Below, piece by piece: positions 148-34,400 of a stretch of 64,000 nt of DNA; the first letter of the stretch is position 1; each line of letters starts with the position of its first letter. A model generated the notes under the pieces. That model was given only the letters and a program-made list of their open reading frames with translations, was not told the origin of the DNA and searched no databases. A program made the translations under genes and the position numbers. The DNA comes from Orbicella franksi (lineage: Eukaryota): NCBI GenBank assembly GCA_964199315.1, contig OZ116708.1, positions 6,324,001 to 6,388,000 on the forward strand. Reading direction: 5' to 3'.

Positions 148-3100
148 TCATAATGCTGAAGAGTAATATTGAGTATTTAAAAGGTATAGTTTATATTGCT
201 TATAAAAGGAAGTGTAAGGCAGTTTTTTAAATTCTGTTGGAATAATTTCCCAAAGTTTTGATGTAACAAAAGAGAAAGTAGAGGACCCATAGTTATCATT
301 TACTTTTGGCCTATGAAAATTCAAATTCACAGCAAATCTTGTATTGTAGGCATGGACTTCAGATGCCTGAGTAAGGGTTCTATGGAATATAGTTGGAATA
401 TTTGTTGAGTCATTTAAAATTTTATGAGTAAATAAAGCCACTTTTAATTTGTACACATTTTCAAATTTGAGAATTCCTAAAAGACTGTAATATGGTGAAG
501 CATTTTCCCTGCTATAAGCAAAGAATATGCTTCGGACACATTTATTCTGCTTAGTTATGATTTTACGTAGATTAGTTTTACATGCACTACCCCAACTTAT
601 GATAGCATAGGATAAGTATGGATATATGAAAGAATAATACAATTGTTTCAATGTATGAAGATCAACAAAATATCGTAATTTATTAATAATTGCTATATTT
701 TTTGCTAATTTATTATTAATGTGCTGGATCTGCGGTCCCCATTGTAAATTTTGATCCATATAAATACCTAAATACTTAATTTGACTTTTATGTGCAATGT
801 TAGGAATATGTATATACGGTCTTAGTCTTGTAGATGAAATTATCATGTAATTAGTCTTGGTAAGATTTATAGATAGTTTGTTGATGATACAATATTTAAA
901 ACCTAATTTCAATTCCTCATTCATGACATACTCAAGCTGATGCAGATTACCACTTGTATAAAACATATTTGTATCATCAGCAAATATACGGAAGGATAGC
1001 TTTTTTGAGCAGTTAGGTAAGTCATTAATATAAAGCAGGAATAGAAGAGGACCCAAAGTGGATCCCTGTGGTATTCCACAAGTAATGGTTTCAGGACTAG
1101 ATTGGATGCTACCAATCTTAACAAACTGAGTGCGATTATGTAAATAATTTTCAAACCAGTTAAGGGTTATTCCTCGTATGCCATAGTGGTAGAGTTTAGA
1201 TAAAAGAATATTATGGTTCACAGTATCAAATGCTTTAGAAAAATCTAAAAAAACACCACAGGTAACCAGCTTTTTATCCATTGTTTGTTTGAGAGTGTCA
1301 GTGATCTCAAAAATGGCTTGCTCTGTTGAGTGCCCTTTCCTAAAACCAAACTGATATCTATACAGAATGTTGTGTTTTTCCAGAAAATCATATAGTTGAT
1401 TAGAAATTAATTTTTCAAGTACCTTACTGAAAGGTGAAAGAGTTCAAATGGGCCTATAGTTTCCTGGGTCAGTTACATCACCACTTTTGTAAACCGGAGT
1501 AACTTGAGAGGCTTTCAAAATATTTGGTACAACACCAGTTTGTATTGATTGATTATAGATTTGAGTGAAAGGTACTGATAAAGGTTCAGCTGCTATTTTT
1601 ATTAAATTATTAGGTATATCAATTGATGATTTGTTCTTATCTAATGTCTTAAACAAGTTTGAAACCTGGGTTTCTGTAACAGTGGACATAACAAAACCAA
1701 TATCTGGAGATGACGGGATATATTGTGTAGGGTTTTCAAAGCTATCTTCAATTCTGCTGGCCAACCTTGGGCCAACATTGACAAAATGTTTATTAAACTG
1801 ATCAGCAATATCTTCATTACTAGTGAAAGTCTTGTTGTTCCTTACTATTCTTTGAGGTGAGGTCTGTCCCTTTGTTTTCCTTTTAATTAAATTACCAATT
1901 ATTTTCCATGTAGCCTTTAAGTTATTTTTTCATAAGTCAATTTTTTTACAAAAATAGGCTTTCTTATTAATGTTTTTAAGATGGTTTAATCTATTTGAGT
2001 ATTTTTTAAATTCACAAATTTTGACTGGGTCATTGGATAGATAATGGGTTTTGTACATAGCATGTTTAGTTTTAATGGATTTGAGCATTCCCTTTGAGAT
2101 CCAAAGTTTTCTTAATTGCTTTTGTTTATTTCTAGACACTTGTTTTAGGGGTGCATGCTTATTGACAATTGATTTGAGTGTATTAATAGTTCTAGCTGTT
2201 GTTTCATGCAAATTATTACATTTACCACAGATGAAATTCCAATCCACAGCACTGATGTCTTGAAGATATGATTCAGGGTTGAACTTACTGTAGTCTCTGA
2301 AGTAAAGTTGCCCATTTTGTTTTCTAAGTGATGTTTCGACTGTGCAGAAAATTGGTAAATGATCTGAGATATCAACGGCTATAACCCCTGAGATCAACCT
2401 GTTAACTGTATTTGTATAAATATGATCAATTAAGGTTGCAGTATGACTGGTGATTCTAGTGGGTTTTGTTATGACTGGTAATAGATTGTGGGAATAAATC
2501 ATGTCAAGGTATCTACCTGTTTGCAGGTGTGTGTGATGTTTTAAAAGGTCAATATTCATATCCCCTAACATATATACTTCATATCTGTTCATATTTAATT
2601 CTTGCAGAAATTCATTGAGTATCGATGTGAATTCATCCACATTGCAGATGGGTGCTTATAAATGCAGCCAATCATAATATGCTTCTTATTGTTACCAGGG
2701 TCAATTTCAACCCAACAGGATTCTACTGATGAAAGATCTATTATCAAGTCAGGCCTGGGGATAGTTTTAAGAGCATCATTGACATAAATAGCTGTGCCTC
2801 CTGCAAGTTTTGGTGAATCACTATGAAAAAAATTGTAATTTGATAGGTCTACATTTGAGATCGAATTAGGATTTAGTCTGATTTCTGTGACAGCAATTAT
2901 GTCTGGCCTTGAATCAATAGAGTATAGCATGTCATTCAGTAAGGTCAAGTTTTTTGGTAAACTTCTAATATTACAATGGAAAAGAGAAATACCTTTACCT
3001 TGAGCGTTACATAGGATATTATCAAGCTTAGGGATATCATAGTACTCAGACTGAGTATTTATAAACATTAAATCAGGGTCAGCTTCATCATTTTTATCTG

Positions 3101-3230
3101 GATTTGGTAGAAAGTTGGTAGAAAGCTCGATTAATTGATTTATATTCCTAGACCAATTACTAATAGCAAAGCTAAATTCCCTGTCGTCTAAATTATAGAA
3201 GGGAAGAAATTGCAGAGTGTTTACGACATA
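148..3230 (-). pseudogene. LINE ORF2 (APE endonuclease + reverse transcriptase), inactivated
   Basis: APE motifs LFHCNIRSL, IAVTE, IGCIYKHP, GDMNIDLL, TLIDHIY, SDHLPIF. RT motifs FLDFSKAFDTVNH, GIPQGSTLGPLLFLLYINDL, FADDT, KYLGI. Lesions: one frameshift near 2645, and in-frame TGA codons at 1930-1932 and 1444-1446 with the frame continuing across both. Confidence 0.95.
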
Positions 3231-3270
3231 GAATTTGACAATTTAGAGCGGTACATTAAGAGATTATTTT

Positions 3271-3811
3271 CTAAGTATTGCTTATCTGGTCGAGGTAGTC
3301 CTCAAATTCCTCATGCGTAGTAAAAGCTTCTGTGGCAGACGTTTCACTAACTTTCAGCATGATCTTGCCATTACTGGTCCACAGGAACTTGACATTGTTC
3401 TTCCTCTTGTATTCCTTGATTCGTCCAAAGAGCCTTTTACGGTAGCCGGTCAAGGATTCGTTTATGTAGATCTTGTTACTTCGAGAGATGGATTCGCCTA
3501 TTTCAGTTTGTAAAGAAGGCAAATGTCGAATATTCTTTCCAACAAAATGTTTGCGTTTCTTAAATACTTCTTCTCTCTTGTCCCTTTGGAGAAATTTAAC
3601 AATCATTCGATTTTTTACATTTTTCGAGTCTGGAAGCCTGTGAGCATATTCGTCGTAGTATAGGGTTATCAAGACTAGTTTTCGGGACACCAGTGATCTC
3701 TAAGCAATCCCTTCTCAAGTACTGTTGTGTTTCGTCGAGCGAACATTCGATTCGATATAAAGACTCTGCAGTCTTGTCAGCCATGTCCGCCATCTTTGTT
3801 TGTTTCGCTTC
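3271..3811 (-). pseudogene. LINE ORF1, 3' portion (with an internal deletion/frameshift near 3645-3665)
   Basis: QQYLRRDCLEITGVP...AHRLP...IVKF...YINESLT...KFLWTSNGKI motif series typical of ORF1 of this LINE group; split over two frames. Confidence 0.85.
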
Positions 3812-4340
3812 CACTGGAAAAATTGGCAAATTTCCCAATTGGAATTTTGTATGGATATTGTATGGAATTTGTGTGGAAATTGAATATTTTCCAAACATGG
3901 AAATAGTACAAGTTTTCCAAACATGGATTTCGTCCGAATACCAATTTGGATTCTCAAGATACCAAACATGGATTTCCGAAATTTGTGCGAGAACATCATA
4001 CTTGGAAATAAACAAAACCTCATGTGGATTTTATGGCAACAGGTCAACATACTGGGATTTTCCTTTTCCCAAACATGGATTTTCTTTTCCCATACCTGGA
4101 TTTTAACAGAACCCACTGTGTAAAGTAAGAAAACCACACTAGAATTTGCTACTAAATACATGTTTGGATTTGTATCTAAACAAATTTGGTTTCTAACCAC
4201 TTTCCCTATTTTGGAAAAATGGAAAACCATAATGGAAATTAATGTAATTCCAGGGTTGGTATTCAACATACCAAACTTGGTTTTTGGAGTTTTCTGTTTT
4301 GGGATTTGCAGCCTTCCCGCCTGGGAAATTTTAATAGCCA
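3812..4340. repeat. Left TIR and subterminal motif array of the CACTA element
   Basis: CCAAACATGGA occurs at 3891, 3917, 3962 and 4069, a variant at 4090, and an inverted copy near 4159. Confidence 0.85.
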
Positions 4341-5426
4341 ATCGATATCTACACCACAGCTGCACACAATTTAGCAATTAATATATGTGCAACACCCCAG
4401 CTGTCCATTTGTTGGGTCAAGACCAGTGTAATGTAATTTATCTTACAGAGGTGAAAACTAAACAGATAGAGCTTAATTTTAGCATACTCTCTGGTAATTT
4501 TTTATTGTTACTACAAAAATATCATCTGTTTTTGCATCTAAGTCAATAAAATTGATGCAAATTAACAATTAGATTAATTAAATTACAAAGTTGCTGACAA
4601 TAACTACAACTGAACTGCTACATGCTTATGCATGTGACAGCGTTGTTTGTTTCAGGTAAAGAAGTACAAAGTTAAAAGACTTCTGCCTTTCACTACTAAG
4701 TTATTTTGAACTGGGCTTACAGATACATCATGAAGTTAAAAACTGTCCACACTTGATGTACCATAAAAGACAGTAGCAAAAAAAACTAAAAAAGAAAGAA
4801 CTATCCTCAAATAGAATGCTCTCTATTGCATTGTGGAAAAAAAACATAGCTATTAATACAGGTAAAGCCTTTTGTTCTTTAAAAAGGATTCACTCAATTT
4901 TATGCCTTGATTATAATCTTTGTCAGTGATAAATTACAAATCTGAACTGACAGTATGCTTAGAATAATGATAATTATTAACAGTTTCGGGGTGCTTCTGC
5001 TGGGGCCCAAAAGTATATGTCATGCTCTTATTTTTTATTTTATTGGTCCAGCTTTGGCTAAACTGGAAATGTTTTCAGACAAACATGGGAATATAAAAAT
5101 AGATATATATTTTATACTTTTAAGCCCCGCTAATGCACTTTCAGCTTCAAATTCAACAGTTAACTCTCTGGTCTCGAAGGAGTACCCTGCTTCACAGAAA
5201 TCTTACAGAATGTGAACATTTTCACCAACTTGTAGCTGCAAGACTATTTAAACATAGAATACATCCAGCATATATTTTAAGAAAATACTGCTAAGAACAC
5301 TTGAACCGTAAATTTCAACAGTAAACTATCTGGCCTTGCAAAAGTGTGTTGTGGAATTGGTACACAATACCACCTACTTGTTATGGCAAGTCTACTTAAA
5401 CATCCAGTTAAGTACATACTCAGAAA

Positions 5427-8400
5427 TTAAGAGTCCTTTGCTGTAGACTCTTCCAGAATAATCTCCTTGACTACTTTAACATCATCACGAGTCAGTGATC
5501 CCTGATCTTCCTCCTTAGAGTCATGTATGGTAATATAGCCCTCCTTGCGGAGTAAATTTGCAATTGCTCTAATGTGTGTCATCTTGTCCTTGCCTCGTAA
5601 AAGGCCAAGGTTGAAGATTTTTTTCATCTTTTGTAATTGATCCATCTTCACTTCTTTTATGGATGGTTTTCCTAGAACCACCATGACAATTAAATCTGCT
5701 GTGGTCTGAGTCATGTCTAGGATAAAAATAAACAAAATGTTAAAAGAAAGGCTATATTCACATAGTATACATTCAAACCAGGCCACTTGACCATTTAAAT
5801 GTTAATTGAGAACAATGGATAGGCCCCTTTTTTACAAACAGACCAATAGCATTAAAAATACATTTTGTAACCAAGCATAGGCAAATAAATCCTTCTTTAT
5901 CTTAATTTGTTACCTAACCAAGACAAGTCGCTGCGACAAGTCCCCTTGTCTGTTCTGACCTTTAAGAATGCATTCTTGGCAGCAAAATATAATTATTGTC
6001 ATTAGTGTGGTGTTCCAGGAAATATCCATTCCTCTCTCAGGGAAGGTTTTTAGGTTTGAATTTCCAAACCCCAACAGAAATTCCAGTTCATACATCAAAC
6101 TTTCCTTTAAAAATTTTGGCTATTAAGATCCCCCCCCCCCCCCCCTTCCCCACTAGAATTTCCAATGACCTTACATGGACATTTTCTGGCACTCCATACT
6201 CTAAACTAAATACAATTATAATGAAATCATGTTTTACAAACCCATCCCACATTGAGGTTTGAAAACATAACAAAATTAGCCTTGCTTTGTCTCATAAGCT
6301 ACATTTAAGTATAGTTTTTTGGTTCTCAAGATCATGGAACAAAAAAACTGGAAGTCAATATTTATTGGCAGCAATAACTTCTGTAATTCCCTCACCTTCA
6401 TCAAAATAAAGGTTGTACGTTTTCACACGTTGCAACTGAGATGCATATCTGGGTGGACTAGGACTTCCACTACTGGACCCGGCTGACTCGGTTGACTCAG
6501 ATGCACTGTCTGTTGACAGCACTTCTTCTCTGGTAAGGGGTAATTCTTTGTGATGGCATCTCTGCTCCCTGATTTTCTTTAAAACTGTTTCCAGGACTGC
6601 TTCTTTACCTAATCCACACTCTGGAAAAAGATGAGTGTCATCTTCGACCAATTTTGCCACAAACTTGTCTACTTGGATAGCATCTGCCTTATTTCTATAA
6701 ACTGGTAAGGTACTTCCATGTGACCATCTTTTCTCTACTTCCTTTGTAATCTTTTTTTTCCTGGTAAAGGAAATTATTTATTAACAACTGTTTGATCTTA
6801 TTATATTTTTTCTGTTAGACACAGGACCACAAAGTCATCAGAACTTAAGTTGACCATCAAGTGTTACTATAACAATTTGGAAGAGAAATTCAACTCATAA
6901 CATAAAATCATCTTAAATTTTCATCTTTGTGTAATGTTCCAAGTGGTGAGAAGCTCTTGGCATTACAAGTAATCAAGTTAGTTTCATAAAAGCACAAGAT
7001 AAAAATTATGTAAACATGATCCTTAGGTTAACTACCAGAATGGCACACAGAAGACTTTGCATTACTTTTTAGATTAATACCTACTTTGTATTGTAAATGC
7101 TCTTTTCCTTGCAATTTAAGTACTGTCTTTCTTCTGTTGTAAGCAGCCTGTCATAATCCTTGAATGATGATCTTTCAATCTTCTTTCTTTTGTGACCACT
7201 ACCAAAAGGGTGGGAGGTATCTAGAAAAAAAGCAATCAAATAATATTGACAGTTCTGAGATTACATGTGGTTTCCAGTTGTAAGAGTGATTTTATACTCT
7301 GTGTGATGAAGAAGAATACCTCATACACGTAATGCAGAAAAATTTAGATTACTGCAACGATTTGACCCGTCTCCCCCACTCCCCAAAATTTCTTGAGGAT
7401 GGCCTAATCTTGGCAATGCTCTCGTTAAAACTAGAGTTAAATAATAGGTTTGGAAAGAACTTGGCCAAGGAAGAATATTTACCATTCACAACAGGTTTAA
7501 TAGCCATGAGCTCCCTTGAGAAGCGTTCTTTCTTCCCAATTGTAGTCACCCCTAGTTTTTCAAGTGTCGTATCCTCTTCCAGGCGTTTGCTTAATAATGC
7601 TTTTCCATCTATCTCTTCTTCAACAAATTTTTGACCAACAGACTCGCCAAAAAAACTACAAATCCACGTTTTTACTTGTTCTGGTGTCCAGCCTGCAAAT
7701 AAAAAAAGTATCATAACTAGTTCCACAGAAATGGAAGAAACTTACGAGAATAATTCTTGCATAATTCTAAGTTTAAACTAACCATTCTCAACTTGCATTG
7801 TTATGAACAAATGCATTAATAAACAGACTGTGATTAGAAAATTCTTCCGAGAAAAACAGCTCGAACAAGTGAGTTGGAGGTAGCTGAGAAACAGGATGGA
7901 ACGCAACGAGTTCATAAAAAGTACTTCAAATTTATTCACTGATCGTAGCCGCTTCCTAGACTTTGGTCTATAATATGCTATCTTACTCTAACATTTAATA
8001 AAAGCAAGCTTCGACTTGAAAAGTGGGAAGTGATGTTGGACTTTGTCGGTTTAAATTAAATTCGAAGATATTTATATTATCAAGCGAATCCCCCATTTTG
8101 CAATTCGATTTAATTTCGCATTCCATCCAAGTAAACGCACGAAAAAATACTACAGAACAATTTTTTTGGCCTGCCACTTAAGCATTTAACTTGGGTTTCA
8201 CTTCTGCGAAATCGTCGGTAGATTAGAAGCGAAAACAGACCATATAAAACTTACCAACAATGTTCGCGGGTTCAGTTGAAGACACATCTGTTTCCCGCCT
8301 TTCGTTCTGTGGAAATGCAATCATCTTCTCCTTGCGCGCTTCTTTTGCGACTCTTACTTTGACTTTGGGATAAAATTTGCTCCACCTCTTCGTCATTCTC

Positions 8401-8469
8401 AGAAACAGAATCGCCTGCTTGTTGACTGCATAAAGGCGAGGATCGAAAAGCCTTTCCTTTCGACGCCAT
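5427..8469 (-). CDS. Transposon-borne SAM (sterile alpha motif) domain protein, 5 exons, about 380-400 aa
   Basis: Exons 8255-8396 (or 8255-8469 with a frameshift), 7483-7692, 7085-7220, 6396-6760, 5427-5716; all GT-AG with compatible phases. Exon 2 reads WTPEQVKTWI...FVEEEIDGKALL...LEKLGVTTIGKKERF, a SAM pattern. The start codon is ambiguous. Confidence 0.8.
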
Positions 8470-8667
8470 AAATCTGAACACGCTCCCTCACAACGCCCGC
8501 CCAGCTCAGCACGTAAATTCGGCGAAGAGGGCGGGAAAATGGTTGCACAGTCCTTTATACCAAGACTGCTCCCATCTGATTGGTTGCTGAAGCTTTCCGT
8601 CCATTTGATTGGTTCCAACGAAACCGGTTGGACGCTGTCCTGTCGGACTGACTGCTCATATGACAAG
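8470..8667. promoter_or_regulatory. Putative bidirectional promoter inside the transposon
   Basis: 198 bp, CpG-rich, between divergent ATGGCG starts (8469 minus, 8668 plus). GGGCGGG at 8529; GATTGGTT (inverted CCAAT) at 8578 and 8607. Confidence 0.6.
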
Positions 8668-11600
8668 ATGGCGGATCTTGCAGCCGCTTCTTTGTGTTTC
8701 TGTACTGAAAGAAATTCCGTTCATGTTCATTGCCCCTGCCAAGAATGCCGTGGAAAACCTGTAAATTATAAAACTCAGGAAAGACATCTTTCAGCCTTGA
8801 GACTGTTGCAACAAGAAAACAGTAAGTTTATTTTACTGTCGAATGTTTAGAAACGCCTCTACAAATTAACTGAGTTCTCGATCGATCCGTCGGAGCAGCT
8901 AGCTAGACGTGCACATTATGGACATAAAATAGGTATAGGCTTACAATTTGAAACATGTTTCTATATTTTTTGGTTAACGGAGGTAAATAAGTACTGCTTT
9001 ACTGATAAACGTAACGACAAGCAACGTAAAAACAGCCCTATTCAACTAGTAGTTTCCATGTTTTTTATTAACCAAGTTTTTGCAACTGGTGTGACAAATC
9101 TTCAACTATCCTCATGCAGGGTGGCAGTTTAAATTTGTTTTGGATATAAAAAATATAAATAGAAAAAGATGTTGTGTCTGTCAAATAATTATTAGGAATC
9201 TCACACAAAGAAAACCAAAGACTAAACTAGTTTTTAACTATTTCTATTATATAATTACCAGCTTCAGGGATTAGTTCAATGTTACCGGAAACCAGTCTCC
9301 CTGAAAGTCACCTGGATAACTCAGCTGTTCCAAGTTGTTCTGAAGATTATGTGGAAGGGAATGAATGCTCTTCATCATTAAGTGGCTGTGGTAGCTTTGA
9401 CAATTATGATGGCACTGTTTTTAGTGGAACCTATACAGAGTTTGGTTCCCATAGTTCAAGCAATTTAAGAGGGAATCCAGAGGAAGCTGAAGAAGGTGTA
9501 ATTGAGGATGACACATTGGAAGACAAACTCAGAGATGCCATTGTATGTGCCATATTTGAAGCACTTGATCTTTTGCATGAGACAAAGGGATCTTTGAAAA
9601 ACTTTGAGGAGCTATTAACAATGGCTAGACACATGTACTGCAAGGGAGCTGGTTTGGGGGAAGATGATGAAACAGTCAAGAAAAAATGGCCCAATAACTG
9701 GACTGCTGCGAGGCAAATGCTAATTGCAGAAGGTTATGAAGATGCTAAAGAGTACTTCATATGTTTCAGTGATGTATATCCACAACATTGGGACATTTTA
9801 GAATCTCAGTCAGATTTATGCCGCCATTGTGGAGAAAAAGGTGCCATTCCCTATTATTATTTGGGTCTCAAAGGAAAGATTAAGCGCTGGTGTCACATCT
9901 GGATATGTGTTACAAACTCTTATCACACTGGAGAGAAAAAGAACATTGGCTGAATAGAAATGAAGGCTGGCATACAAAGAAAGAACTATGGGATGGGAAG
10001 CGATTTGCAGAATTATCATGGTTCTGGGATTCCAATACTGAGTATTGCCTGCCGGTCCGATGTCAGTATCCTGGATGTAGCAATATAATTTCAGCTGAGA
10101 CAGTTTTAGCAGCTGATGAAAATGAAGATGGATACCATAAAGTGAGATGTGATTGCCGTCATAGTACCTTCCATGTTCAAGCAAAATATGTTAGAGGAGA
10201 TCCTCGAAACATTGCTTTTGTGGGTGAGTTACAGTGCAGATAGAACTGTTGTAAGTTCAGGGAAGGTTTTTGTGTTATTGTGTTTTTGAAATTGGCAAAG
10301 TAAAAACAGTGGTTAATTATTTGGCACATCTTAAGGGCAGTGTAATACTGTCTGACTTGTGGTCACAATCCACCAACAGCAGTCACCTAACAGTACAGAA
10401 AGTGATCTTTTTTTGCTATAGTGAAGATAATTTGAATTAGCTGTCACATTAAGTATACATTTAGACAATTGTTAAAATATTTTCTTTACATTTTTTTGAT
10501 GTTTGTTTAATAGCTCACTGGGACGGGTTTCAACTGTTTGGATCAAGCCACAGATCAACAGGTTATGCTTCTCAATTTTAGTGGTTGGTTTACACATGAT
10601 ATATATTAAAGTACACACTGAAATATTATTTATATTTATGGACTTACAGTTTCCTATACAGTTATTCCATTGTACAGTGTAGATCAACATGTATTCTACA
10701 ATAAAAGTCTATTGTCTTTTTGAATGCTTTTAGAAGTCTTCACAAGAAAACAATAACAGCAAAACCATTTCTTTCCCACTAACATTTTATTTTTATCCTG
10801 ATGAGTTTTAACCTTAAAAAGGTAAGTGTACTGGAACATTATTCATCTGTTTATTTTGTGCCATATTTGTAGGAACAATTGATGTTCAAGTTGCAACAGT
10901 TTCAAAGCAAGATAGACAACACACAGTTGAAGTGTACACTGTTGGATTTGTACCATCATACCTATTGCCTGATTCACGACCTGTTAGCCTGGATCCCTTT
11001 CTTGATCCACTTGTAAGAGACTTTGAAGATGGATTCATTGAAGGTTATTTATATTTATATTTACTATGGTTTTATTAGGAAGATAAGTAGCAAGATTTGG
11101 CTTTGTGCAGGTTGTACATTTTGACTAATTAAAATTAGGGTTTGGGGATAGATCAAGATAAGTAATACCATTGATCTTAAAGATCTTTAGTGAAGGTATT
11201 TACTAGTCAATATTATTCTTCAGTCAATATTTAATTCTCAATTAAATTGATATAAAAAAGTGATAACTTGTGTCAATTTGACTCCTTATTAAATTGTGTT
11301 AGAGGGTGTTAAAATGTTAACTTTTCAAATAAACAGTTAAACATTGGTTTAAATTTATCTTTGGTTTGAAATTTTTCAAACCAGTTTAAATTTGAACCAC
11401 AACATCTACATTAAGGCAATTAAATTAGAAGCTAAAATACTTTTAATTACTTTTTACTTTTAGGTATAGAAGTTGACTATAAATTAAAGGTTGATTGTTT
11501 TTCTGAGGGAAAGATGATTATTCGACATTTGCTGTTATTGTGGACAGGAGACCACCCTGCACAATGTGAGGTGTGCAAATCAAAGTCATCTGGTGGTAAG

Positions 11601-14600
11601 AAGGACTGCAGAAGATGCAAGTTGGAAGGTGATTACTTTGAGGTGTCTCGTGTTCAGCTATGTAATAACTGTGAATCATTAGTTATTGTAGAATTCTACT
11701 AGTATGATATGATATACTTTCTTTCAGTACTGTGGTATGTTTCAGTTGAATGCAACTGTTTTGATTATAGATAGTACAGTAAATTATTGATGTTACTAAT
11801 TGTTAATTTTGTGACAATAAATTTAAATTTATTAAGTTAATTTCAATATAGGATTAATTAAATTTATTTTAATTTTTTCTGTTAATGTTACTAAAGAGAT
11901 TCACCAAAAGAAAGGATTTAAGTGCAATAAAGGGTGAATTTTTGTGCTGTTACTTTGTGCATAGAAGTGACGCACAATCATATAACTATGTACAGTATGA
12001 ACTATCAACTACGTAGTACAAATATGTTTGTCCCTAGACATTCAGCTGAGTGATTGAAAATCTTGGACTTGTCAGCATATGTACCATGACCTTTCATGTT
12101 GTGTATAAGAGCACAACATGTGTAGCCTTAAACAGTTTCAATTGGCTGTAAATCTTGTCTATTATTTCTTGTTGTTTTATTTCTAATTATTTATTTTTTC
12201 ATTTCAATTACAGGAGTTTATCTGCCAGATCAGAGACATTACTATTACACTTGATTTAGGGAGCATTATAGGTTCCCTTGGGAGAAAAGGGATTTGAAGG
12301 ATGAAATTCCAAAAATGACTGAAGTTGAGCAGGAAGAACGAAAAACAGTGTTTGAAAACCTTTCAAGGGAGATTGGCTTTCTTGGAGTATCACTGCTTCA
12401 CAGGTTGAATGCATTGTATGGTTTCGATGTACTACAGGATCTTGTTTTTGATGCCATGCACCTTGTTTCACTCAACATTGTAAAGAGAAGAGTGCAGTAC
12501 TGGCTATCAAATGGTATTCTTGACAAGGAGGAGTTTGGAGAAAGACTGAAGAGGATGCCATGGTCCAAAGGTACAGTTTATGTTGCTTGTTTTGTCTTTT
12601 ATCTGCTACAACCAAAACAAGTGCAAGTTTATCTGTGATTTCTTTAAACATTAATTTAGAAACAGGATGTGTAGTACATGGCAATAATAAATCAGAGCCT
12701 AGCAGTGAGTGTAATCCAGAGCCTGTAGATAATTTTACTTTGTTGCATTAAATGTCAAACCTTAAAAAGCAGGTCTCATTACTGTTTTTGTTACAGTCAT
12801 CTTGAACACCAAACCACATCCCCTGATATAAAATAATTTCTGCAATGATCATACTAATTGTTTTGATTACCTTCATGGTGCCAAGCCAATAGTCTGTTCA
12901 TTTGGTACTTGTTTTCTTAGATTTCCCATTCAGAAGTTTCATCTTTATCTTCTTCTTTTTTTTCAGGATACAAAGTCAGTAGAATCCCAAATGATATAAC
13001 AAAGATGGGATTCTGGAAAGGTGAAGCTTTTGTCCATTCTTGCATGTTTACAATAATAATGAGTTAGTTTTAGTTTTTTTAGTTTAGTCAGGGGTATGAT
13101 ATCAAAATATTGCTACTCTGCTTGACTTACTTGGGAAGCCAGTATATATAAGTATTTTGAGATAATTTGAGCCCAGTACAGTGTAGCTGCAAAATTTTAT
13201 TAAAAATCATATCTTCGCATTATTTTGTTCAATAGCTGAGGAGTACCAGAAGCTAGCATTTCCTGCATCAGAGTTTGTATTGGAAGGACTTCTTCCTGCA
13301 GAAGAATATGAGGTGTGGGCACCAATCCCTCGTATTGTGGAGCTCATTTTCAATTGTGGAAGAAATGGTTGGACTAGTGAAACAATTGCACATCTGAAAG
13401 CCCTCAGCTGGAGACACTGTATCCTTGTAGAAGACAGATATGGTCCTTCGGAATGTGTCATTACCCTACACAGCCTCACTCATCTACATGAAGACATATC
13501 AAGGTTTTCATCACCTGATAACTTTTGGTGCTTCCAGTTTGAGAAGGCAGTTGAAAGGTAAAGTTAACATAGAGTTTACAAATTAACCTCAATAAATTGG
13601 CAAAGATAAATGCATACAATAATAAGGGACCTAAAACTTTCAATTGATTATTACACAAACATACATGTAGACTTCACTTATACTCGAACTTCAAGAGTAG
13701 CTTTTCTGGTAATTTTTTCAAGCAAACTACTGTTGAGAAGAAAGCAAGGAATAAAAAATTTAATTAGTGAAAAAGCATGCAGACAAATTTATGCAAGATT
13801 ATTATAGGACAAAGTTAGCTTTCAGAAGGAGTTGAAATGCATGGTACTGCATTAGTGATTAGGAAGTGACTGTTCCAGAATTTGGCTGCTAACGACAGAG
13901 AACACAGTCAAAATATCTAAAACATAGAAAATCTAAAATAAATGCTAGAATGTTTATCTTCATGTGCTACTTAATTATCTTGTAAGGTATGTTAAACAGA
14001 CAAGCAACCGAAAAGGAGTAGAAAAAACTTTCGCACGCAAGGAGTGGAGAGTTCCTGCAGATTTGGAGACTTGGTAACAAGGGATTAAGAGCTGCAACGA
14101 CAGAAAAGTCAGGAAAATATAGCAGACAAAAGGTACTATTTATTAGTGTCATAAAATTTACTGGTTCCTACTTTTTACAGCTTTTTGTTTTGTGTGTGTG
14201 TGTGTGGGGGGGGGGGGGCTGTGTGTGTGTGTTTGTGTTCAGAAAACATGTAAGATCATAAATAGCTAATTTCAGTTATATGGGTTAAACTTTACAAATC
14301 CTTTGAGATTTGAATGAATGACCAGGTACCTTCTTAACCAGGTACTTTCTTATTTTAGATGGTGGCCTCTTCTCTAGAATCTGCAAAGGACCTTATTAAA
14401 GAATGTGCATGTGGCAGAGATGAAGCTCGAGCTAACAAAGGAATACTCACTGGAAGTGGCAACATTGAGCAGTTGCAAAGAGATCAAGGAATAGCAATTC
14501 ATGCCTATAACAATCAAACTCTAACTCCTGAGGTGGCTCATTCATTCCGTAGTGCCTATCTACCATTACACAATGAAGGTGCAGGAGGAACTCTTTATCG

Positions 14601-15174
14601 CACTGGAGATGACATCATAGCCTTGCAGGGGAACCAAGAGATTTGCCTCAAAGTCATAAAATTCTACTTAGTGGAACATGAGAATCTTTTCACGCCATTT
14701 GCTATTTGTGACGCCTTTCAGTATATCTTGGATGATGATGGCCATCCATTGAGACATCAGCTCAGTGATACTATCTATGTCAAGCCTTTTCAGACATGCA
14801 CTTGTATTGGCTTAAATGACATTGTAAGGCCAATCATGTTGTGGTTGGAACCTGATGGAAAATGCGCAGTTGTGGATCATTCCAGAGCAACCATCCCCCT
14901 TCCCAAGGTTATTGTCCCTGCTTATCCCCAACCTGGTGACATGGTCAGTGTGAAAGGAGAGCGGGATGAATCATGGCATGCGGAAGTTCGACAGGTTGAT
15001 GCTGAACAAAAGAGAGTGAAAGGATATTTCTTTGTGAAGCATTTACACTGGGAGAGAAATCACTTGTGGGTTAGGGAATCAAGTGCACGAGCTATGGACA
15101 GTATAAGCTACAAAAGTATTATTGATATTTTGCCAGGGATATGGCATGGTCCAAACTGGCAAGAACAAATCTAA
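8668..15174 (+). pseudogene. CACTA/EnSpm-type DDE transposase, 10 exons, about 1065 aa if repaired
   Basis: Exons 8668-8821, 9262-10223, 10514-10561, 10873-11043, 11464-11628, 12214-12570, 12967-13020, 13236-13557, 13987-14132, 14359-15174. Motifs HCPCQEC, HWDG, TGDHPAQC...CRRC, DAMH, GFWKAEEY, HSLTHL...WCFQFEK. Lesions: 1-nt deletion near 9895, TGA at 12252-12254, frameshift near 14045. Confidence 0.9.
14181..14237. repeat. (TG)n/poly-G microsatellite in a transposase intron
   Basis: Seen directly in the sequence. Confidence 0.9.
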
Positions 15175-15419
15175 CATTGATATGCCTTATCATAAGTTGG
15201 TAAGCAGAAAAAGAATTCTAAATAGTTCATTCCAGCTATAGATGTGCCAGCTCCTTGGAGGAATTCAATAATTAATTTATATATTAATTTCTTTCTTCAA
15301 TTCAAAGTACAATAATATATTGGTACAGTGTTCTAAAACAGTGTATTTAGAAAGTAAACGTTTCTTTGTAGAAATACAGTTTGCATGCCAACAGTAGTTT
15401 GGCAATCAAAAACCCCTAT

Positions 15420-16166
15420 AAGGAAATTTAGGATTTTCCATGTTATCATGTCAATTACATGTGTAAATTTAGTTTTTTTTCTTGATGAACAAAAATACAT
15501 ACTTGGAAAATATAAATTTCTCTGTGGAATTGCAATTTTCCAAGTGAAGACTGGAAAATAAAATTTCCTTGTTTGTTTTGATTATGGAAAACTTAACTTG
15601 GGTGTTTTATCCAACAATTTTCCATACCATAACCAAGTATGGAAACTGAGTAGATGTGGATTTATATTTTACATGCAAAATACACATGTGGAAATTTGGT
15701 ATTTACTTTTTGATCGACAAAAATACATATCTGGAAAAAAAAATTCTCTGTGGAAATACAATTTTCCAAATAAAGATTGGAAAATAAAATTTCCATGTTT
15801 GTTTTAAATATGGAAAACTAAAGTGAAATATTTCATCCAAAAAATTTCCATACAAGAACCAAGTATGGAAACGGAATGGATGTGGAGTATTTATTTTACA
15901 TACAAAATACAAACGTGGAAATTGGGAGTTTTTTTAATGAACAAAAATACATACGTGGAAAATAAAAAATTATCTGTGGAAATGTAATTTTCCATGTTAG
16001 GATTGGAAAATGAAATTTCCATGGTTGTTTTTTATATGGCAAACTAAATTGGAGTATTTTATCCAACAATTTTCCATACAATAACCAAGCATGGAAACTG
16101 AGTAGGTGTGGATTTTCTATTTTACATACAAAATACGCATGTGGAAATTTGGTATTTTTTCCAGTG
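15420..16166. repeat. Right subterminal higher-order repeat: three ~226-bp units plus a partial one, ending in the TIR
   Basis: ACAAAAATACAT recurs at 15489, 15717 and 15941. Each unit contains CCAAG(T/C)ATGGAAAC and ends in a GTGGAAATT(T/G)GG motif. Confidence 0.92.
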
Positions 16167-16415
16167 TTCGACCGAGCCAATAGCTTCCTTGTATTTCTTA
16201 TCAAGCTTAGTTGCCTGTTCTTTGACGTTTTGCAAAGTTTGCACAACGGTATCATATTTGTTTGATAGAAACTGCTGGGATTTCTCCAAAGTATTGCATC
16301 TTTCTGTTAGCAAGACGATACTTGCTTTCAGCGACTGCATTTCCATCTTGATTTCTTGCCTAATACTTGGTAAAAACTCTTCATTCCATATTCGTCGTAG
16401 TTCATCTACCTGCAT
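16167..16415 (-). pseudogene. LINE ORF1, 5' portion (coiled-coil region)
   Basis: MQVDELRRIWNEEFLPSIRQEIK...KYKEAIGSVE joins in frame to AKQTKMADMADK (from 3808 downward) once the insertion and one TSD copy are removed. Confidence 0.88.
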
Positions 16416-17957
16416 GATCTTATCCTCCCTAGTCCCTTGGTAGGGTGATTAGTCTCTAGCAGCGTAATTTAGTGTCTTAGTCTCTGTTTCATTCAAACTT
16501 CATCAGCGCGCCAAAATGAACGGCGGCCATGATGACGTTAATAATCAATTATTAACGAATGGTTATCCGTTATCGTCTAGGATTCTGAATATACCAGTAC
16601 TTAATATTTGAACATAATATCTTGCAGCAGGTAAGCTAAACGTAACTTTTCTGTTAACTTTTGTGTTCCATAGCAGGTATGTTTCTCAATGCGTTCTCTG
16701 TTCTTCCCCTTACGTCCTACCCGAAATATCTCTGAGTTGTTTCTTCAGCTCATACCCCGCCTTCTCCACAAGCTAAAAATCCCTAGGGATTGTGCTAACA
16801 CGGGAACTGGCGCGCAAACTCTAACGAGGCGAGCCGGAAACCACCTGAGAGAGTGTTAGAAAGGTCGAGGCTTTCCTTCTATTTTCTCCGTTCGTCCCCA
16901 GTGGTTTCCCAGATGACAATTGGTCTATTTCTACACCGTGTGTTTCTTTATGCCTACTTACGATTAATTTAGACATAGTTAGCCTTTTCTTTTCCTCTAC
17001 ATTCTTTGTGGATTTACTAAGAATTTCGTTATCTGTTACACCGTGTGCTCCCTTTGCATTCCCTTGCGTCCTCCCTGCGTGCCTTACACATGAACAACGT
17101 CTGACCAAATGTAAGAGCAAATTATAGCGCGACTACTCGAACAAGGCCACCCAGAAGGAAGCTAATCAGTCAAAATGTGAACTGAAAACAATAGACTTGT
17201 AGCTTTCTCGAGTCAGCAGGTAATGTGGATCTGATCTGTTTGACATGAAAACATTAACAATATCCATTGTTCCCAATCGACGTTCTGGTTGGTTTTTTTA
17301 ACTCTCATCCAGGTGGCCTGGCTTGAGTATTCGCACTGTAAGGGAGCGCATTGGGTAACAGACGAATAAATGCAGCAAGGAATCGACAGCGTATGCACGT
17401 GCTCCAATTACTCTGCAACGTGCCATTAATGTTGGGGCGTGTACAGCGAAACAAGCGAGCGAAAAAATGCAAGAGCTATTACTACAATGCTATTGCTAAA
17501 ACTTGAATTGGTTTCGCTACTGATTGATTCAGATGAATACCGAAAGGGAATCAAAATTCGCTCAAACTACTACGTTTGGAGCCGACCTTTTCCCGAGCTT
17601 ATAAGACAACGGAAAAGGCGGGCGAATAGGGTGGGAAATCGAGGGGAAAAAAGAAAGAAATCAGACTAGATAATATGCATTGTTTGGGTGCAAAACGAGA
17701 GGATATATTTCGAAGTTTACAACCTCAATAAAATATTTATCTAAGCTTCCTCTGATCTTTGGAATTTCAATTGTATTTTTAACATGTAAAATGGTTACAG
17801 AACATTGTATTGGAATATTGTAATAGAACTCAGTTCCGTTTACCTACATATCACGGTAATCAAAGTCTCAATTCTTCTTAAAATGTCACACCAAAGTCAA
17901 GCGAGTGAAATTACTAACCCATATATTCGTCGTTAATCCCCCTGCGCAAGTCGCGGG

Positions 17958-31400: not shown

Positions 31401-34400
31401 GTATATAGGATTATTTTGGCCGCTTCGTAGCTAGTTTTCAAATAACTTACCAAAATAATTCGTGTGCAGTACATATTTTCAATGATGTGTATTATTAGTA
31501 TAATCTGTCGTCTATGTTAGGCATCTGTAAGAGGCTAGTTAAAACTTAGGCCACCATGAAATCAACATGTTTCGGCACAATCAAATCAACTGACAAAAAT
31601 ACAATGCTAACCAGTAAATAGTTTGGACTGATCATAAATATGTAATTCCATTGGTCGGCCCATTCCGTGAACAACGACTTCCTTCAAAGAAGTTGTCATG
31701 TTGTACTCGTGAATACTTCGACTATTCCAGTCAGACCAGAAGAGAACGTCACCATATAGTGCGAGTCCGAATGGGTGCATAGAATCCAGTGATAAATCTA
31801 GTATCACCACGCGATTATTTCCTTGTAGGTCCACCCTCTCAATTTTATCATGGTACCCATCGCACCAGTACAGGAGTCTACTTTGGTAATCCATTGCGAG
31901 CGAGTTCACCCACGTAAGTCCGAAACTAACAAGAGTTGCCCTGGCAGAACCGTCCATGTTGGCTTGTTCGATTTTTAGCGATACTCCTCTGCCACCCCAA
32001 TACATCTTTCTAAAAGGATAGTGTTGCAAATGAGCATAAAGCGGTAACAAAAGTAAACGTTGGTGAGAACATTGTCTTACAATGATAGCTTTTTTTCCCG
32101 GAAAAAGCAGAATTATTTCTAAACAGACTGACCCCTTTCCGAAGATTTGTTAACATTCTCGAACATTATAAAGCATTGTTGAAGATGACCATATGTCTCA
32201 AAAACGTCGAGAACGATCGTTAAAAGAAATAGAAGAGTGACTGAACTTCAAAATATTAATTTGCATAGATATCTGATAGTTTGCATAGATATTCGATAGA
32301 ATGTCAGCAGAATTAAACGCCATGTAATTGCATAGTGCTTTTTTAAAGTTTGGATTACCTTTCTCCAATATCAAGCAGTATGGCTCTTGGCTTTTCGATG
32401 TTTGATGTGACTAGACTCCTTCTAGATGACCCATCCATCCTTGCGACCTCAATTCTATTATTTGCCTCATCTGTCCAATAAATATTACGTCCAACATAAT
32501 CTACTGCCAGTCCTTCCGGGGTAATAACATTATTATACGCAATAACTTCAACAGAGGACTCGTTAGGAAATGCTCTGGCCACTAATCCCAATGTCACGTC
32601 ACTCCAATAAATTTTTCCTTCGACTGGATCGTAATCAACGGCCACGGGTCTTGAGATGTTTGTGCTGATTTCCAGAGGATAGCAAGGGATCTCGGGCACT
32701 TCCAGAGGTACTTTGTAAATTTCTCCAGTGTCTGCTTCAGCAAAAATTATGAATTTGTCCGAGCTTGTTTTGTCGAACATACCTTGAACATTAAACAAAT
32801 AAATCCATGAGAATCGAACTGATCTTCATATTTCACAGAAGTACATAAAGACTTCCTTACTATTGGTGATGCCGCTCTCAGTATTCACCTGCTATTATAA
32901 CGAATGTCGACAACTTAAAAATCTCAAGTAAGTAGACCTTACAATGAATCAAAAGGAGATCAGACCTGTTTCATTCACAGAGCATTTTTTTTCAGCCAAC
33001 GTTATATCTATCGACATCACTTATTTTAACCTCTGAGTAGTAAATAATGTTAGCGTGCTTTCGCTCTATTCTTTTTTGTTCTTTACAAGGTGCCTTTGTC
33101 CTCACTGATTCCACGACTTAAAGCCAAATCTGCAAAGCCATATGTTACAAGGAGCGTCTGAACTACCAAGGAGTACACACAATCTAACCAAACTGCTGTG
33201 CTGTTGTCCCTAGGAAGGGTAAAGCTCAATCTATCAACTTTTTAAACTTGCTCAACTCGTTATATTGTTTACGGAGGCGATGTTATCACTGTACTATGAA
33301 AACGGTGTTCAATCGGGTCCCTTTTTGTAACGTCTTTTTTGTTGTTGTTGTTTTTACCCTAGTTATTAGTGTTTCACAAGTCAAGACGTGCAACACGCGA
33401 CTCAACATTACGATGTAATCCACGTCATATAAGATATGTTACAAAGAGAGGGAAGATGATCCGTACAGTAACCGAATACAGACAAGTCAGCTATAGTGGT
33501 ACTGATTGAAAAGATTGAAGCAAATTAACCTATTGATTTCTCACCATGGTCACAGGTTTTCCCATCAGATTTCAGGGCAATACCCGTCGGACATGCGCAC
33601 TGGTATCCTCCTGGCTTCAGAAGGCAGAAATCGCTACAGAGTCCATTGTTCTGAGAACAATTATGAGAACCTGACAAAAGTCAATCGAAATGAGTAATTT
33701 CCAGCAATAGATATTTTCAAATGTTTCGTATCTTGTGTATGTTATTTTTTTAATCAAAGTTCATCATGCACTATGACTATACATCTTGTGATTTACTGTT
33801 GCTTATTTCTTTTTTAAATATATTTTTTAACAAAATCGGACTGGCAAAGAACCATTCTTTGCGACAACAGAGTTCAATAAGTGTTTCACCATCTGATGAC
33901 TGATATATTTTCCCAGAGTTGTTGTCGAGTGTTAGCGAGGAAGAGGAGCGTTGCTTAGCTTGTGTGATACTTGATAACTTTTGCATCCACAGATTAAATA
34001 CAAAACTTGGTTTATTGCAGGACTGTACGACAATNNNNNNNNNNNNNNNNNNNNNNNNNNNNNNNNNNNNNNNNNNNNNNNNNNNNNNNNNNNNNNNNNN
34101 NNNNNNNNNNNNNNNNNNNNNNNNNNNNNNNNNNNNNNNNNNNNNNNNNNNNNNNNNNNNNNNNNNNNNAATATCAAGGTTGGATTAAATACGTGAATGT
34201 CCATCGGCTTCTGGAGGCCATTAACTACGATTTCCTGGTTCCCATTGCTTACGTTTACACGTGAAATACTCTTGGTGTTCCAATCTGTCCAGTATAGCAT
34301 ATCCTGATACACAGCCAGTCCGAAAGGATGGATATTAGCCCCAGATGACATTATTAACTGTCTGTTTCCTCCATTGAGGTCTGATACTTCAATTTGATCA

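What the first reader, a model, noticed from the sequence alone, without database searches (positions are those of the whole stretch)
5427..8469. Transposon accessory gene encoding a SAM-domain protein
The five phase-compatible exons encode an N-terminal SAM domain, a basic KRKK/KKKK region, a predicted helical region (KEVEKRW...EAVLETVLKKIREQR), a Ser-rich linker and a C-terminal helical region. SAM domains are established as polymerising or RNA-binding modules. A SAM plus putative DNA-binding protein could polymerise along the repeated subterminal motifs to pair the ends, or to repress the element. That mechanism is my inference; SAM-containing ORFs near CMC-type transposases may already be reported.
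Basis: partly seen in the sequence, partly recalled or inferred. Interest (0 to 1): 0.75.

Follow-up and report, generated by a model that had tools for sequence, protein, structure and literature searches.

The report
Coral transposon's conserved SAM-domain helper gene
A 12-kb cut-and-paste transposon in a stony coral carries, beside its transposase, a second conserved gene for a SAM-domain protein; the same gene pair occurs in corals and a sea anemone, so it is a real helper gene of a kind not reported before, though its action is still inferred.

Summary
The gene is real. On the minus strand, exon 7483-7692 encodes a SAM domain above Pfam's threshold. RNA contigs confirm three of the four introns at the predicted positions. 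The exon 4-5 junction has no RNA support but is backed by conservation. This copy has one extra T at 8313-8315, which puts ATG 8469 out of frame.

The gene lies inside a 12,355-bp element (3812-16166) with CACTG inverted ends, a 3-bp TTC duplication and TGGAAA-rich subterminal repeats. It sits head-to-head with a spliced CMC/EnSpm-like transposase gene.

The same gene pair recurs in six diverged lineages from coral assemblies, a Tara Pacific scaffold and the sea anemone Actinostola. Only exons, promoter and termini are conserved. dN/dS is about 0.14. An exhaustive search of 1.84 billion proteins found no host homologue. The accessory-gene reading is therefore strongly supported and the captured-passenger reading is rejected.

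Beyond the SAM domain, closest to polymerising Polyhomeotic and SHANK domains, the protein has two basic domains with no sequence relatives. Their fold matches to DNA-binding domains are weak. A TnpA-like role in binding the ends is plausible but untested.

The scan noted this element before, and a similar one on another piece of this genome. I rate it a new variant of a known kind.

The parts
3812..16166 (.). Whole CMC/EnSpm-like DNA transposon (12,355 bp), flanked by the 3-bp target-site duplication TTC (3809-3811 and 16167-16169)
   Evidence: Inverted repeat I1 of 42 nt, 81% complementary, CACTGGAAAAA.... Flanks read. The same terminus bounds copies L001, L004 and L006.
3812..3853 (+). Terminal inverted repeat on the SAM-gene side
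16125..16166 (-). Terminal inverted repeat on the transposase side
3854..4400 (.). Subterminal repeat zone on the SAM side, with CCAAACATGGA / TGGAAA-core motifs
   Evidence: Direct-repeat families D3 and D4. TGGAAA/TTTCCA occur about 20 per kb at the ends against 1.4 per kb in the element body.
15474..16124 (.). Subterminal repeat zone on the transposase side: three units of about 226 bp, rich in TTTCCA/TGGAAA
   Evidence: Families D1 and D2
8255..8469 (-). SAM gene exon 1 (acidic, Ser-rich N-terminus). ATG 8469 is the family start. This copy has one extra T in the run 8313-8315, so that frame stops at 8272-8274. ATG 8396 is in frame with the donor at 8255.
   Evidence: Joint 8255|7692 and 'left out 1' at 8313 in X1 and X2. 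Frames. Intact exon 1 in L004 and L010.
7483..7692 (-). Exon 2: SAM domain
   Evidence: Pfam SAM_1, 27.5 bits against cutoff 23. Family profile against PDB: PHC3 at 4e-5, then SHANK3, CNK2 and Polyhomeotic. RNA joints on both sides.
7085..7220 (-). Exon 3: basic KRKK stretch and the conserved D-R-L-L-T...I-Y-N-T-K motif
   Evidence: RNA joints 7483|7220 and 7085|6760; alignment
6396..6760 (-). Exon 4: KKKK, a basic three-helix domain ending in an R-E-[QR]-R-R patch, then a disordered Ser-rich acidic linker and Y-N-L-Y-F-D-E
   Evidence: Alignment A2. AF2 helices 2-11, 24-39 and 52-72. 33 clusters in the exhaustive search. Net charge +5.
5427..5716 (-). Exon 5: C-terminal basic alpha/beta domain and stop codon. 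The junction with exon 4 is not seen in RNA but is conserved.
   Evidence: blastn footprint 5731-5465. pN 0.21 against pS 0.79. A1 and AF2 pLDDT 85.6. Homologues.
8470..8667 (.). 198-bp shared divergent promoter / 5' UTR region between the two start codons, with CCAAT-type boxes
   Evidence: Sequence. Region 8826-8524 is conserved with L004/L006. X1 contig 8268-8819 is continuous across it.
8668..15171 (+). Spliced transposase gene (CMC/EnSpm-like). Exon 1 is 8668-8821 and exon 2 starts at 9262. It has at least 10 conserved coding segments.
   Evidence: Joint 8821|9262 in X1 and in one poly-A read of X24. Coding segments. Homologous segments in L001, L006, L010 and L013. Sub-threshold Transposase_21 and Transpos_assoc matches.

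Best explanation
Shown. The gene is a five-exon, spliced, transcribed gene inside a CACTG-ended transposon with a 3-bp target duplication. It is transcribed divergently from the transposase gene across a 198-bp shared region. The pairing is an ancestral, selected feature of a clade of hexacorallian CMC/EnSpm-like transposons, so this is an element-encoded accessory gene and not a passenger. The protein has an acidic N-terminus, a SAM domain closest to polymerising SAM domains, a basic linker, a basic three-helix domain with an invariant arginine patch, an acidic Ser-rich linker and a basic C-terminal alpha/beta domain. The copy in this window has a frameshifted exon 1 and is probably impaired.

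Inferred. The protein most likely does the job that TNPA does for plant En/Spm. One or both basic domains would bind the many TGGAAA-core subterminal repeats. SAM-SAM self-association would then link bound proteins along and between the two ends, helping the transposase to assemble the ends and possibly also regulating the shared promoter. I put accessory-gene status at about 0.9 and this end-binding, oligomerising mechanism at about 0.4-0.45.
For: Inside the element: TIRs and TSD.

Splicing and transcription: three canonical junctions, at depth 74-90 against about 10 for introns.

SAM domain: Pfam SAM_1 at 27.5 bits against cutoff 23. SAM_1 is found in 4 of 7 lineage members scanned. The profile hits PHC3, SHANK3, CNK2 and Polyhomeotic SAM domains at E 4e-5 to 1e-3.

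Linkage: the same head-to-head pair occurs in L001 and L003 (same family), L004/L006, L007-9, L010 (Tara Pacific), L013 (Actinostola sea anemone) and L014. These are independent insertions with different flanks and 3-bp TSDs.

Selection: only the exons, the promoter and the termini align between lineages. L004 (444 aa) and L010 (387 aa) have intact five-exon genes with the same intron phases. dN/dS between window and L004 is 0.10-0.20 per exon and 0.14 overall. Identities are congruent for the SAM protein and the transposase.

No host homologue: 33 clusters in 1.84e9 representatives, all short ORF calls from coral or metagenome DNA.

Mechanism hints: net charge is +5 for the three-helix region and +3 to +6 for the C-domain in three lineages. 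The three-helix model matches the P-element transposase DNA-binding region and homeodomains at Z 5-6, rmsd 2-3 A. The C-domain matches SAP, LEM and Rho-N motifs at Z 3-4.6. TGGAAA/TTTCCA occur 8-19 times per 500 bp at the ends of three lineages against 0.44 in background. Plant precedent: TNPA binds subterminal repeats and is required together with TNPD (PMC2613891; PMC1636069).
Against: No DNA binding, polymerisation or effect on transposition was measured. The fold matches are below the tool's confidence level (Z under 8), and Foldseek found nothing at E below 1. There is no sequence match to any solved DNA-binding domain. The TGGAAA core is also part of the TIR and could be the transposase's site. 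The exon 4-5 junction was not seen in RNA; the expressed X1 copy retains intron 4. Poly-A RNA-seq of the same species label gave almost no reads (X22 none, X24 18 reads). The L007-9 derivative spread to at least three sites with a frameshifted exon 3, so the protein is not needed in cis, although that is also true of TNPA. The transposase's CMC membership rests on termini, TSD, motifs and sub-threshold Pfam hits only.
Confidence: 0.55

Rival explanations
1. The protein is an element-encoded regulator or chromatin-interaction factor, not an architectural end-binding factor. It would bind element DNA or the shared promoter. Its SAM domain would engage host SAM proteins of the Polycomb type (Ph, Scm, L3MBTL) or self-polymerise to repress or shield element copies, giving copy-number control or escape from silencing.
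For: The nearest solved SAM domains are Polycomb-group PHC3 and Polyhomeotic. The gene shares a conserved bidirectional promoter with the transposase. Plant TNPA itself both represses and activates the element's promoter (PMC1636069). Fungal CMC and KDZ elements carry TET/JBP genes thought to counter silencing (PMC12730594).
Against: Nothing distinguishes this reading from the end-binding model, and the two are not exclusive. No host partner was identified. The abundant subterminal repeats favour an end-binding role.
Confidence: 0.22
2. The protein binds RNA, as the SAM domains of Smaug/Vts1 do, or uses its basic domains to act on the element's transcripts (export, stability, splicing choice).
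For: Some SAM domains bind RNA (established knowledge). Weak fold hits include the Rho N-terminal RNA-binding domain at Z 4.5. Intron 4 retention is seen in the RNA.
Against: The family's SAM profile hits protein-interaction SAM domains and not Smaug/Vts1. There is no RRM, KH or other RNA-binding signature.
Confidence: 0.07
3. The gene is a captured host gene, a passenger or transduplicate with no function for the element, or a host gene that merely lies next to a transposase.
For: CACTA and Mutator elements are known to capture host gene fragments (established knowledge). Some loci (L002, L012) hold SAM-gene fragments without an adjacent matching transposase.
Against: The gene lies inside the TIRs in independent insertions. 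The same architecture is kept from corals to a sea anemone at 35-40% protein identity. dN/dS is 0.14. No host homologue turned up in an exhaustive search. L002 and L012 look like decayed fragments.
Confidence: 0.04

Closest known systems
TNPA of maize En/Spm (and TNP1 of Antirrhinum Tam1): the second, DNA-binding protein of plant CACTA transposons
   Same: It is an element-encoded second protein in a CACT-ended transposon with a 3-bp TSD and many subterminal repeats. In plants it binds those repeats, self-associates and is required together with the transposase (PMC2613891, PMC1636069). TNPA-like proteins are non-homologous between families, so an unrelated fold doing the same job has precedent.
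   Different: There is no sequence similarity; Pfam found no Transposase_24/TNP1 hit at E up to 1. Here the protein comes from a separate, divergently transcribed gene and not from alternative splicing of one transcription unit. It has a SAM domain. The host is an animal. Function is untested.
SmTRC1-PrA/PrB, accessory products of the Schistosoma mansoni CACTA element (PMC1636069)
   Same: It is an animal CACTA-superfamily element that makes non-transposase proteins proposed to act like TNPA.
   Different: Those proteins arise by alternative splicing and have no detectable relatives in other animals. The coral protein is a separate gene with recognisable domains and is conserved across Hexacorallia.
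Myb-like ORF2 protein of PIF/Harbinger transposons (my own knowledge, not checked here)
   Same: It is a two-gene DNA transposon in which a separate DNA-binding protein binds the ends and recruits the transposase.
   Different: It belongs to a different superfamily, uses a Myb/SANT-type domain and has no SAM domain.
SAM-plus-DNA-binding polymerising factors: ETV6/TEL and Yan (SAM + ETS), LEAFY, SAMD1 (winged helix + SAM), Polyhomeotic (my own knowledge for function; PDB hits)
   Same: A SAM oligomerisation module is combined with basic, putatively DNA-binding domains. That logic gives cooperative spreading over clustered sites.
   Different: These are host transcription or chromatin regulators. 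There is no homology outside the SAM domain, and no polymerisation has been shown here.
Coral CACTA-type transposon with a BEN-domain accessory gene
   Same: It is a second conserved gene for a putative DNA-binding protein beside an EnSpm-type transposase in the same coral genome.
   Different: It carries a different accessory domain (BEN against SAM plus novel domains) and different end motifs. I did not re-test that note.

Membership tests
SAM domain (Pfam PF00536 SAM_1) | Profile score above the curated gathering threshold | tested here: met
   27.5 bits against cutoff 23, E 4.2e-6, covering profile positions 3-64 of 64. 4 of 7 lineage members hit SAM_1 individually.
SAM domain (Pfam PF00536 SAM_1) | Similarity to solved SAM structures | tested here: met
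   The family profile hits PHC3 (4e-5), SHANK3, CNK2 and Polyhomeotic SAM domains. The single sequence hits SARM1 and SHANK2.
Polymerising SAM (Ph / TEL / Shank type) | Head-to-tail self-association through mid-loop and end-helix surfaces | not testable with these tools
   Only nearest-neighbour similarity is available. There was no multimer modelling and no assay.
CMC / EnSpm (CACTA) DNA transposon | CACT(A/G) termini within terminal inverted repeats | tested here: met
   CACTGGAAAAA... 42-nt TIR. The same termini occur in L001, L004, L006 and L007-9.
CMC / EnSpm (CACTA) DNA transposon | 3-bp target-site duplication | tested here: met
   Window TTC, L004 AAG, L007 ATA. L008 and L009 are ambiguous.
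CMC / EnSpm (CACTA) DNA transposon | Transposase with the Tnp2 / Transposase_21 DDE domain | tested here: inconclusive
   The best result is PF02992 at 16.2 bits against cutoff 28.6, E 0.006, on L010:3211-3471. No hit was obtained on the window's single exons. The spliced protein could not be submitted because it has no reference.
CMC / EnSpm (CACTA) DNA transposon | [quoted passage not shown] | tested here: inconclusive
   C-x2-C pairs follow the W-T-G-D-H-P-A motif in window 11436-11699. The H(3-4)H motif and the catalytic E were not located.
CMC / EnSpm (CACTA) DNA transposon | Clustered subterminal repeats | tested here: met
   Families D1-D4. The TGGAAA core is enriched 20-40-fold at the ends of three lineages.
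TNPA-like accessory protein of En/Spm | Second protein encoded within the element and conserved with it | tested here: met
   Six lineages have the pair. dN/dS is 0.14.
TNPA-like accessory protein of En/Spm | Sequence homology to plant TNPA/TNP1 (Pfam Transposase_24) | tested here: not met
   No Pfam family other than SAM matches any exon at E up to 1. The relation is therefore an analogy at most, not membership.
TNPA-like accessory protein of En/Spm | Made by alternative splicing of the transposase transcription unit | tested here: not met
   The gene is separate and on the opposite strand, with its own spliced transcript.
TNPA-like accessory protein of En/Spm | Binds the subterminal repeats and is required for transposition | not testable with these tools
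   Only indirect hints exist: basic domains and weak fold matches.
Homeodomain-like three-helix DNA-binding fold (exon 4 core) | Significant structural match to solved members | tested here: inconclusive
   6p5a_B Z 6.0, 4j19 Z 5.4, WUS Z 5.3, Engrailed Z 5.2 (rmsd 2.0, 51 aa). All are below the tool's Z 8 guide. Model pLDDT is 67.5.
Captured host gene (passenger) | A host orthologue outside transposons | tested here: not met
   The exhaustive HMMER search of 1.84e9 representatives gave 33 clusters, none a full-length or named host protein.

The most novel reading that the evidence does not exclude
A clade of animal CMC/EnSpm transposons independently evolved a two-component transposition system. 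In it, a SAM-polymerising protein with two previously unseen basic domains coats the TGGAAA subterminal repeats and builds the paired-end complex for the transposase. It may also plug into host Polycomb-type SAM networks. That would be the first animal counterpart of plant TNPA and the first transposon use of SAM polymerisation.
Probability: 0.3. Interest if true: 0.8.

Novelty: new variant of a known kind. Interest (0 to 1): 0.6.

Why it matters
Two-protein CACTA systems are a classic of plant genetics, but how animal CMC elements recognise their long, repeat-rich ends is essentially unknown. This work defines a conserved, selected accessory gene with intact natural copies (L004, L010, the Actinostola locus), with recently mobile derivatives, and with a simple candidate binding motif. 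Together these make the question directly testable in vitro.

If SAM-driven polymerisation on subterminal repeats holds up, it links a common eukaryotic oligomerisation module to transpososome assembly. It would also add two new putative DNA-binding folds. For coral genome annotation, it explains a multi-copy family of orphan 'hypothetical' ORFs.

Tried and rejected
Pfam on the transposase's single exons and long ORFs gave nothing usable. Only L010 gave a sub-threshold Transposase_21 hit. The last word search, on a transposase ORF, returned relatives without names or Pfam labels, apart from one Actinostola hypothetical protein.

I considered an alternative exon-1 donor at 8358, which would keep ATG 8469 in phase. 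I rejected it because RNA uses the donor at 8255.

I considered the 5678-to-4581 jump in X1 as a 3' UTR intron. I rejected it because the window has no AG acceptor there; it is a copy-specific deletion.

P0050 and P0055, long proteins with 14-16 matches, are a bacterial repeat protein and a chance match.

Foldseek against PDB found nothing for the exon-5 domain. Sequence profiles A1 and A2 against PDB found nothing.

The P0005 locus had no DNA. L011 and L015 were too short to show a transposase.

Poly-A raw reads were uninformative: X22 none, X24 18 reads.

The full-length spliced protein has no reference. I therefore made no full-length family scan, homology search or structure prediction, and analysed the domains exon by exon.

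I met no human-like contig. I left the N runs alone (window 34035-34169, 51864-52011, 52208-52355, and one in an L010 intron).
Full report
**1. What is in the window**

The window comes from a eukaryote. The runs that hold it are labelled coral metagenome, and the closest named hit is Pocillopora damicornis.

The finding lies on the minus strand. Translating it gives five exons: 8469-8255, 7692-7483, 7220-7085, 6760-6396 and 5716-5427. The introns are GT..AG and the phases are 1/1/2/1.

Exon 7483-7692 is a SAM domain. Pfam SAM_1 scores 27.5 bits against a gathering cutoff of 23, E 4e-6, and covers the whole profile. The other exons match no Pfam family.

**2. RNA evidence**

In the metatranscriptome run X1, Logan contigs carry joints exactly at 8255|7692, 7483|7220 and 7085|6760. 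All three are CT..AC on the plus strand, which is GT..AG on the minus strand. Their depth is 74-90, against about 10 for the contigs that retain those introns. Three of the four predicted introns are therefore spliced as read.

Two corrections follow.

- First, the donor in use is 8255. In this window the frame from ATG 8469 meets TGA at 8272-8274 before that donor. Both RNA contig sets, X1 and X2, have one T fewer in the run 8313-8315. Intact relatives read from an M-[AS]-S-K-G-K-A-F-R-S-S-P-L-C start to the donor in one frame. ATG 8469 is thus the family's start, and this copy carries a one-base frameshift in exon 1. ATG 8396 stays in frame.
- Second, no joint 6396|5716 was seen. The X1 contig runs unbroken from 6760 to 5678 and then jumps to sequence matching about 4581. 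The window has no AG acceptor there, so this is a copy-specific deletion of about 1.1 kb that removes most of exon 5.

Poly-A raw reads were nearly absent: X22 gave none and X24 gave 18 reads.

**3. The gene lies inside a transposon**

A 42-nt inverted repeat starting CACTGGAAAAA bounds 3812-16166. A TTC duplication flanks it. The subterminal 500-700 bp are packed with repeats sharing a TGGAAA/TTTCCA core, about 20 per kb against 1.4 per kb in the element body.

On the plus strand, 198 bp from ATG 8469, a spliced gene starts at 8668. Its joint 8821|9262 is seen in X1 and in one poly-A read. Its exons carry CMC-type motifs: W-D-G-F-Q-L-F, and W-T-G-D-H-P-A followed by C-x2-C. Exon 1 gives a weak Transpos_assoc-like match.

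Pfam recognises the transposase only below threshold: Transposase_21 at 16.2 bits against 28.6, on the relative L010. The termini, the 3-bp TSD and the subterminal repeats fit the EnSpm definition quoted in PMC12730594. I call the element CMC/EnSpm-like and record the catalytic-domain test as inconclusive.

**4. Is the SAM gene part of the element family?**

The word search with exon 4 found 49 relatives. The exhaustive search of 1.84 billion representatives found only 33 clusters. All are short ORF calls on coral or metagenome DNA. None is a named full-length host protein. Two long hits are a bacterial repeat protein and spurious.

Genomic contexts were compared by tblastn and blastn:

- L001 and L003 (P. 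damicornis) are decayed copies of the window's own family. L001 ends at the same TIR.
- L004/L005 and L006 belong to a lineage about 65% identical in the SAM protein. L004 and L006 are independent insertions, and L004 has the TSD AAG.
- L007, L008 and L009 are three insertions, 99.1% identical, of a 3,819-bp derivative with 45-bp CACTGGAAAAAG TIRs. It holds only the SAM gene and a remnant of transposase exon 1.
- L010, a Tara Pacific scaffold, is 35-40% identical in the SAM protein and 45-64% in the transposase.
- L013, from the sea anemone Actinostola sp. (GCA_033675265.1), has the transposase at 7233-11871 on the plus strand. SAM exons 2, 4 and 5 lie on the minus strand at 5256-1939.
- L014 is a further lineage and a deletion derivative.

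In every locus long enough to judge, the two genes sit head-to-head.

**5. Selection**

Between the window and L004/L006, DNA similarity is limited to the five exons, the promoter with transposase exon 1, and the termini. The introns do not align.

L004 and L010 have intact five-exon genes of 444 and 387 aa. Their introns are GT..AG with the same phases as in the window.

Nei-Gojobori dN/dS between window and L004 is 0.10 for exon 2, 0.12 for exon 3, 0.20 for exon 4 and 0.14 overall. For exon 5, pN is 0.21 against a saturated pS of 0.79. Exon 5 is therefore a selected coding exon even though RNA support for its junction is missing.

Pairwise identities of the SAM protein and the transposase are congruent. 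Window-L006 gives 0.68 and 0.85. All other pairs give 0.35-0.41 and 0.51-0.55. That fits co-inheritance with a faster-evolving accessory protein.

**6. The protein**

- The SAM profile of seven lineage members hits PHC3 (E 4e-5), then SHANK3, CNK2 and Polyhomeotic. These are protein-interaction, mostly polymerising, SAM domains and not Smaug-type.
- The exon-4 family shares the pattern K-K-I..W-P..P-x-F-R..F-P-E-C-G-L-G..A-I..M-R-E-R-R-R, followed by a Ser-rich acidic stretch and Y-F. AlphaFold2 (pLDDT 67.5) gives three helices plus a disordered linker.
- Its best structural neighbours are the P-element transposase DNA-binding region and homeodomains, at Z 5-6 and rmsd 2-3 A. That is below the tool's confidence guide.
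- The exon-5 domain folds confidently, with pLDDT 85.6 and pTM 0.76: three helices plus a hairpin. It has no significant neighbour. Foldseek found nothing below E 1, though its weak list is mostly winged-helix proteins. VIA-align gave Z of at most 4.6, with recurring SAP, LEM and Rho-N motifs.
- Neither domain has a sequence match in the PDB.
- The three-helix region carries net charge +5 and the C-domain +3 to +6 in three lineages. The SAM domain and the linker are acidic.

**7. Mechanism**

Plant En/Spm needs both TNPD and TNPA. TNPA binds the subterminal repeats, and TNPA-like proteins are unrelated between families (PMC2613891; PMC1636069).

The coral element has the same cis-architecture and a second conserved protein that combines an oligomerisation module with basic domains. 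The TGGAAA core is enriched 20-40-fold at the ends of three lineages.

The best-supported inference is a TNPA-like factor that binds the ends and oligomerises. A regulator or chromatin-interaction role is the main rival, and the two are not exclusive. The captured-passenger reading is effectively excluded.

The L007-9 derivative shares an exon-3 frameshift across all three copies. The protein can therefore act in trans, as TNPA does.

**8. Novelty**

Full-text searches found no paper combining SAM domains with CACTA/EnSpm transposases.

The scan had already noted this element (s1-228976, s1-229050) and a similar SAM-bearing element on another piece of this genome (s1-223768, not followed up). 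It had also noted a BEN-domain accessory gene in another coral CACTA element (s1-234104).

I rate the finding a new variant of a known kind.

**Limits**

- The full-length spliced protein has no reference, so all analysis was done exon by exon.
- The transposase's catalytic domain is not formally classified.
- No function was tested.

Noticed in passing
window 4581-5678 (seen in run X1): The expressed X1 copy joins 5678 directly to about 4581, with no AG acceptor in the window. This is a deletion variant of about 1.1 kb that lacks most of exon 5, and it also retains intron 4. A truncated isoform ending at the stop at 6355-6357 is possible.
   Followed up: partly
L007:8098-11916, L008, L009: A 3,819-bp non-autonomous derivative with 45-bp TIRs, holding only the SAM gene and a remnant of transposase exon 1. 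It occurs at three different sites at 99.1% identity, so it moved recently. All three copies share an exon-3 frameshift. The exon-4 donor is GC (GCAAGT).
   Followed up: partly
L004:11625-11802 and L006:11630-11807: A 178-bp partial duplicate of SAM exon 2, 76% identical, lies between exon 5 and the terminal repeat in this lineage.
   Followed up: no
window 151-3811 and 16167-16448, minus strand: The element interrupts a LINE-like retroelement. RT-like ORFs run at 151-3699, and an ORF continues at 16125-16448. I read only the ORF translations and the TSD.
   Followed up: partly
window 6130-6147: A G/C homopolymer in intron 4 is 9-10 nt shorter in both RNA contig sets, so its length varies between copies.
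   Followed up: no
L004 vs L005: These are the same insertion on two contigs of one assembly, 99.9% identical over 20 kb. They differ by a 1,062-bp indel at L004:11727 and are probably haplotigs. I counted them as one insertion.
   Followed up: no
window 20000-64000: The rest of the window encodes exons with Sushi/CCP-like, HYR-like and LDL-receptor YWTD-like sequences on both strands. These appear to be large host extracellular-protein genes. I saw them only as ORF translations.
   Followed up: no
L013 (Actinostola sp. GCA_033675265.1) 1939-11871: The sea-anemone copy appears to have open exons for both genes. Its ends were not found, apart from CACTGGAAA-type strings at 8131 and 16649.
   Followed up: partly
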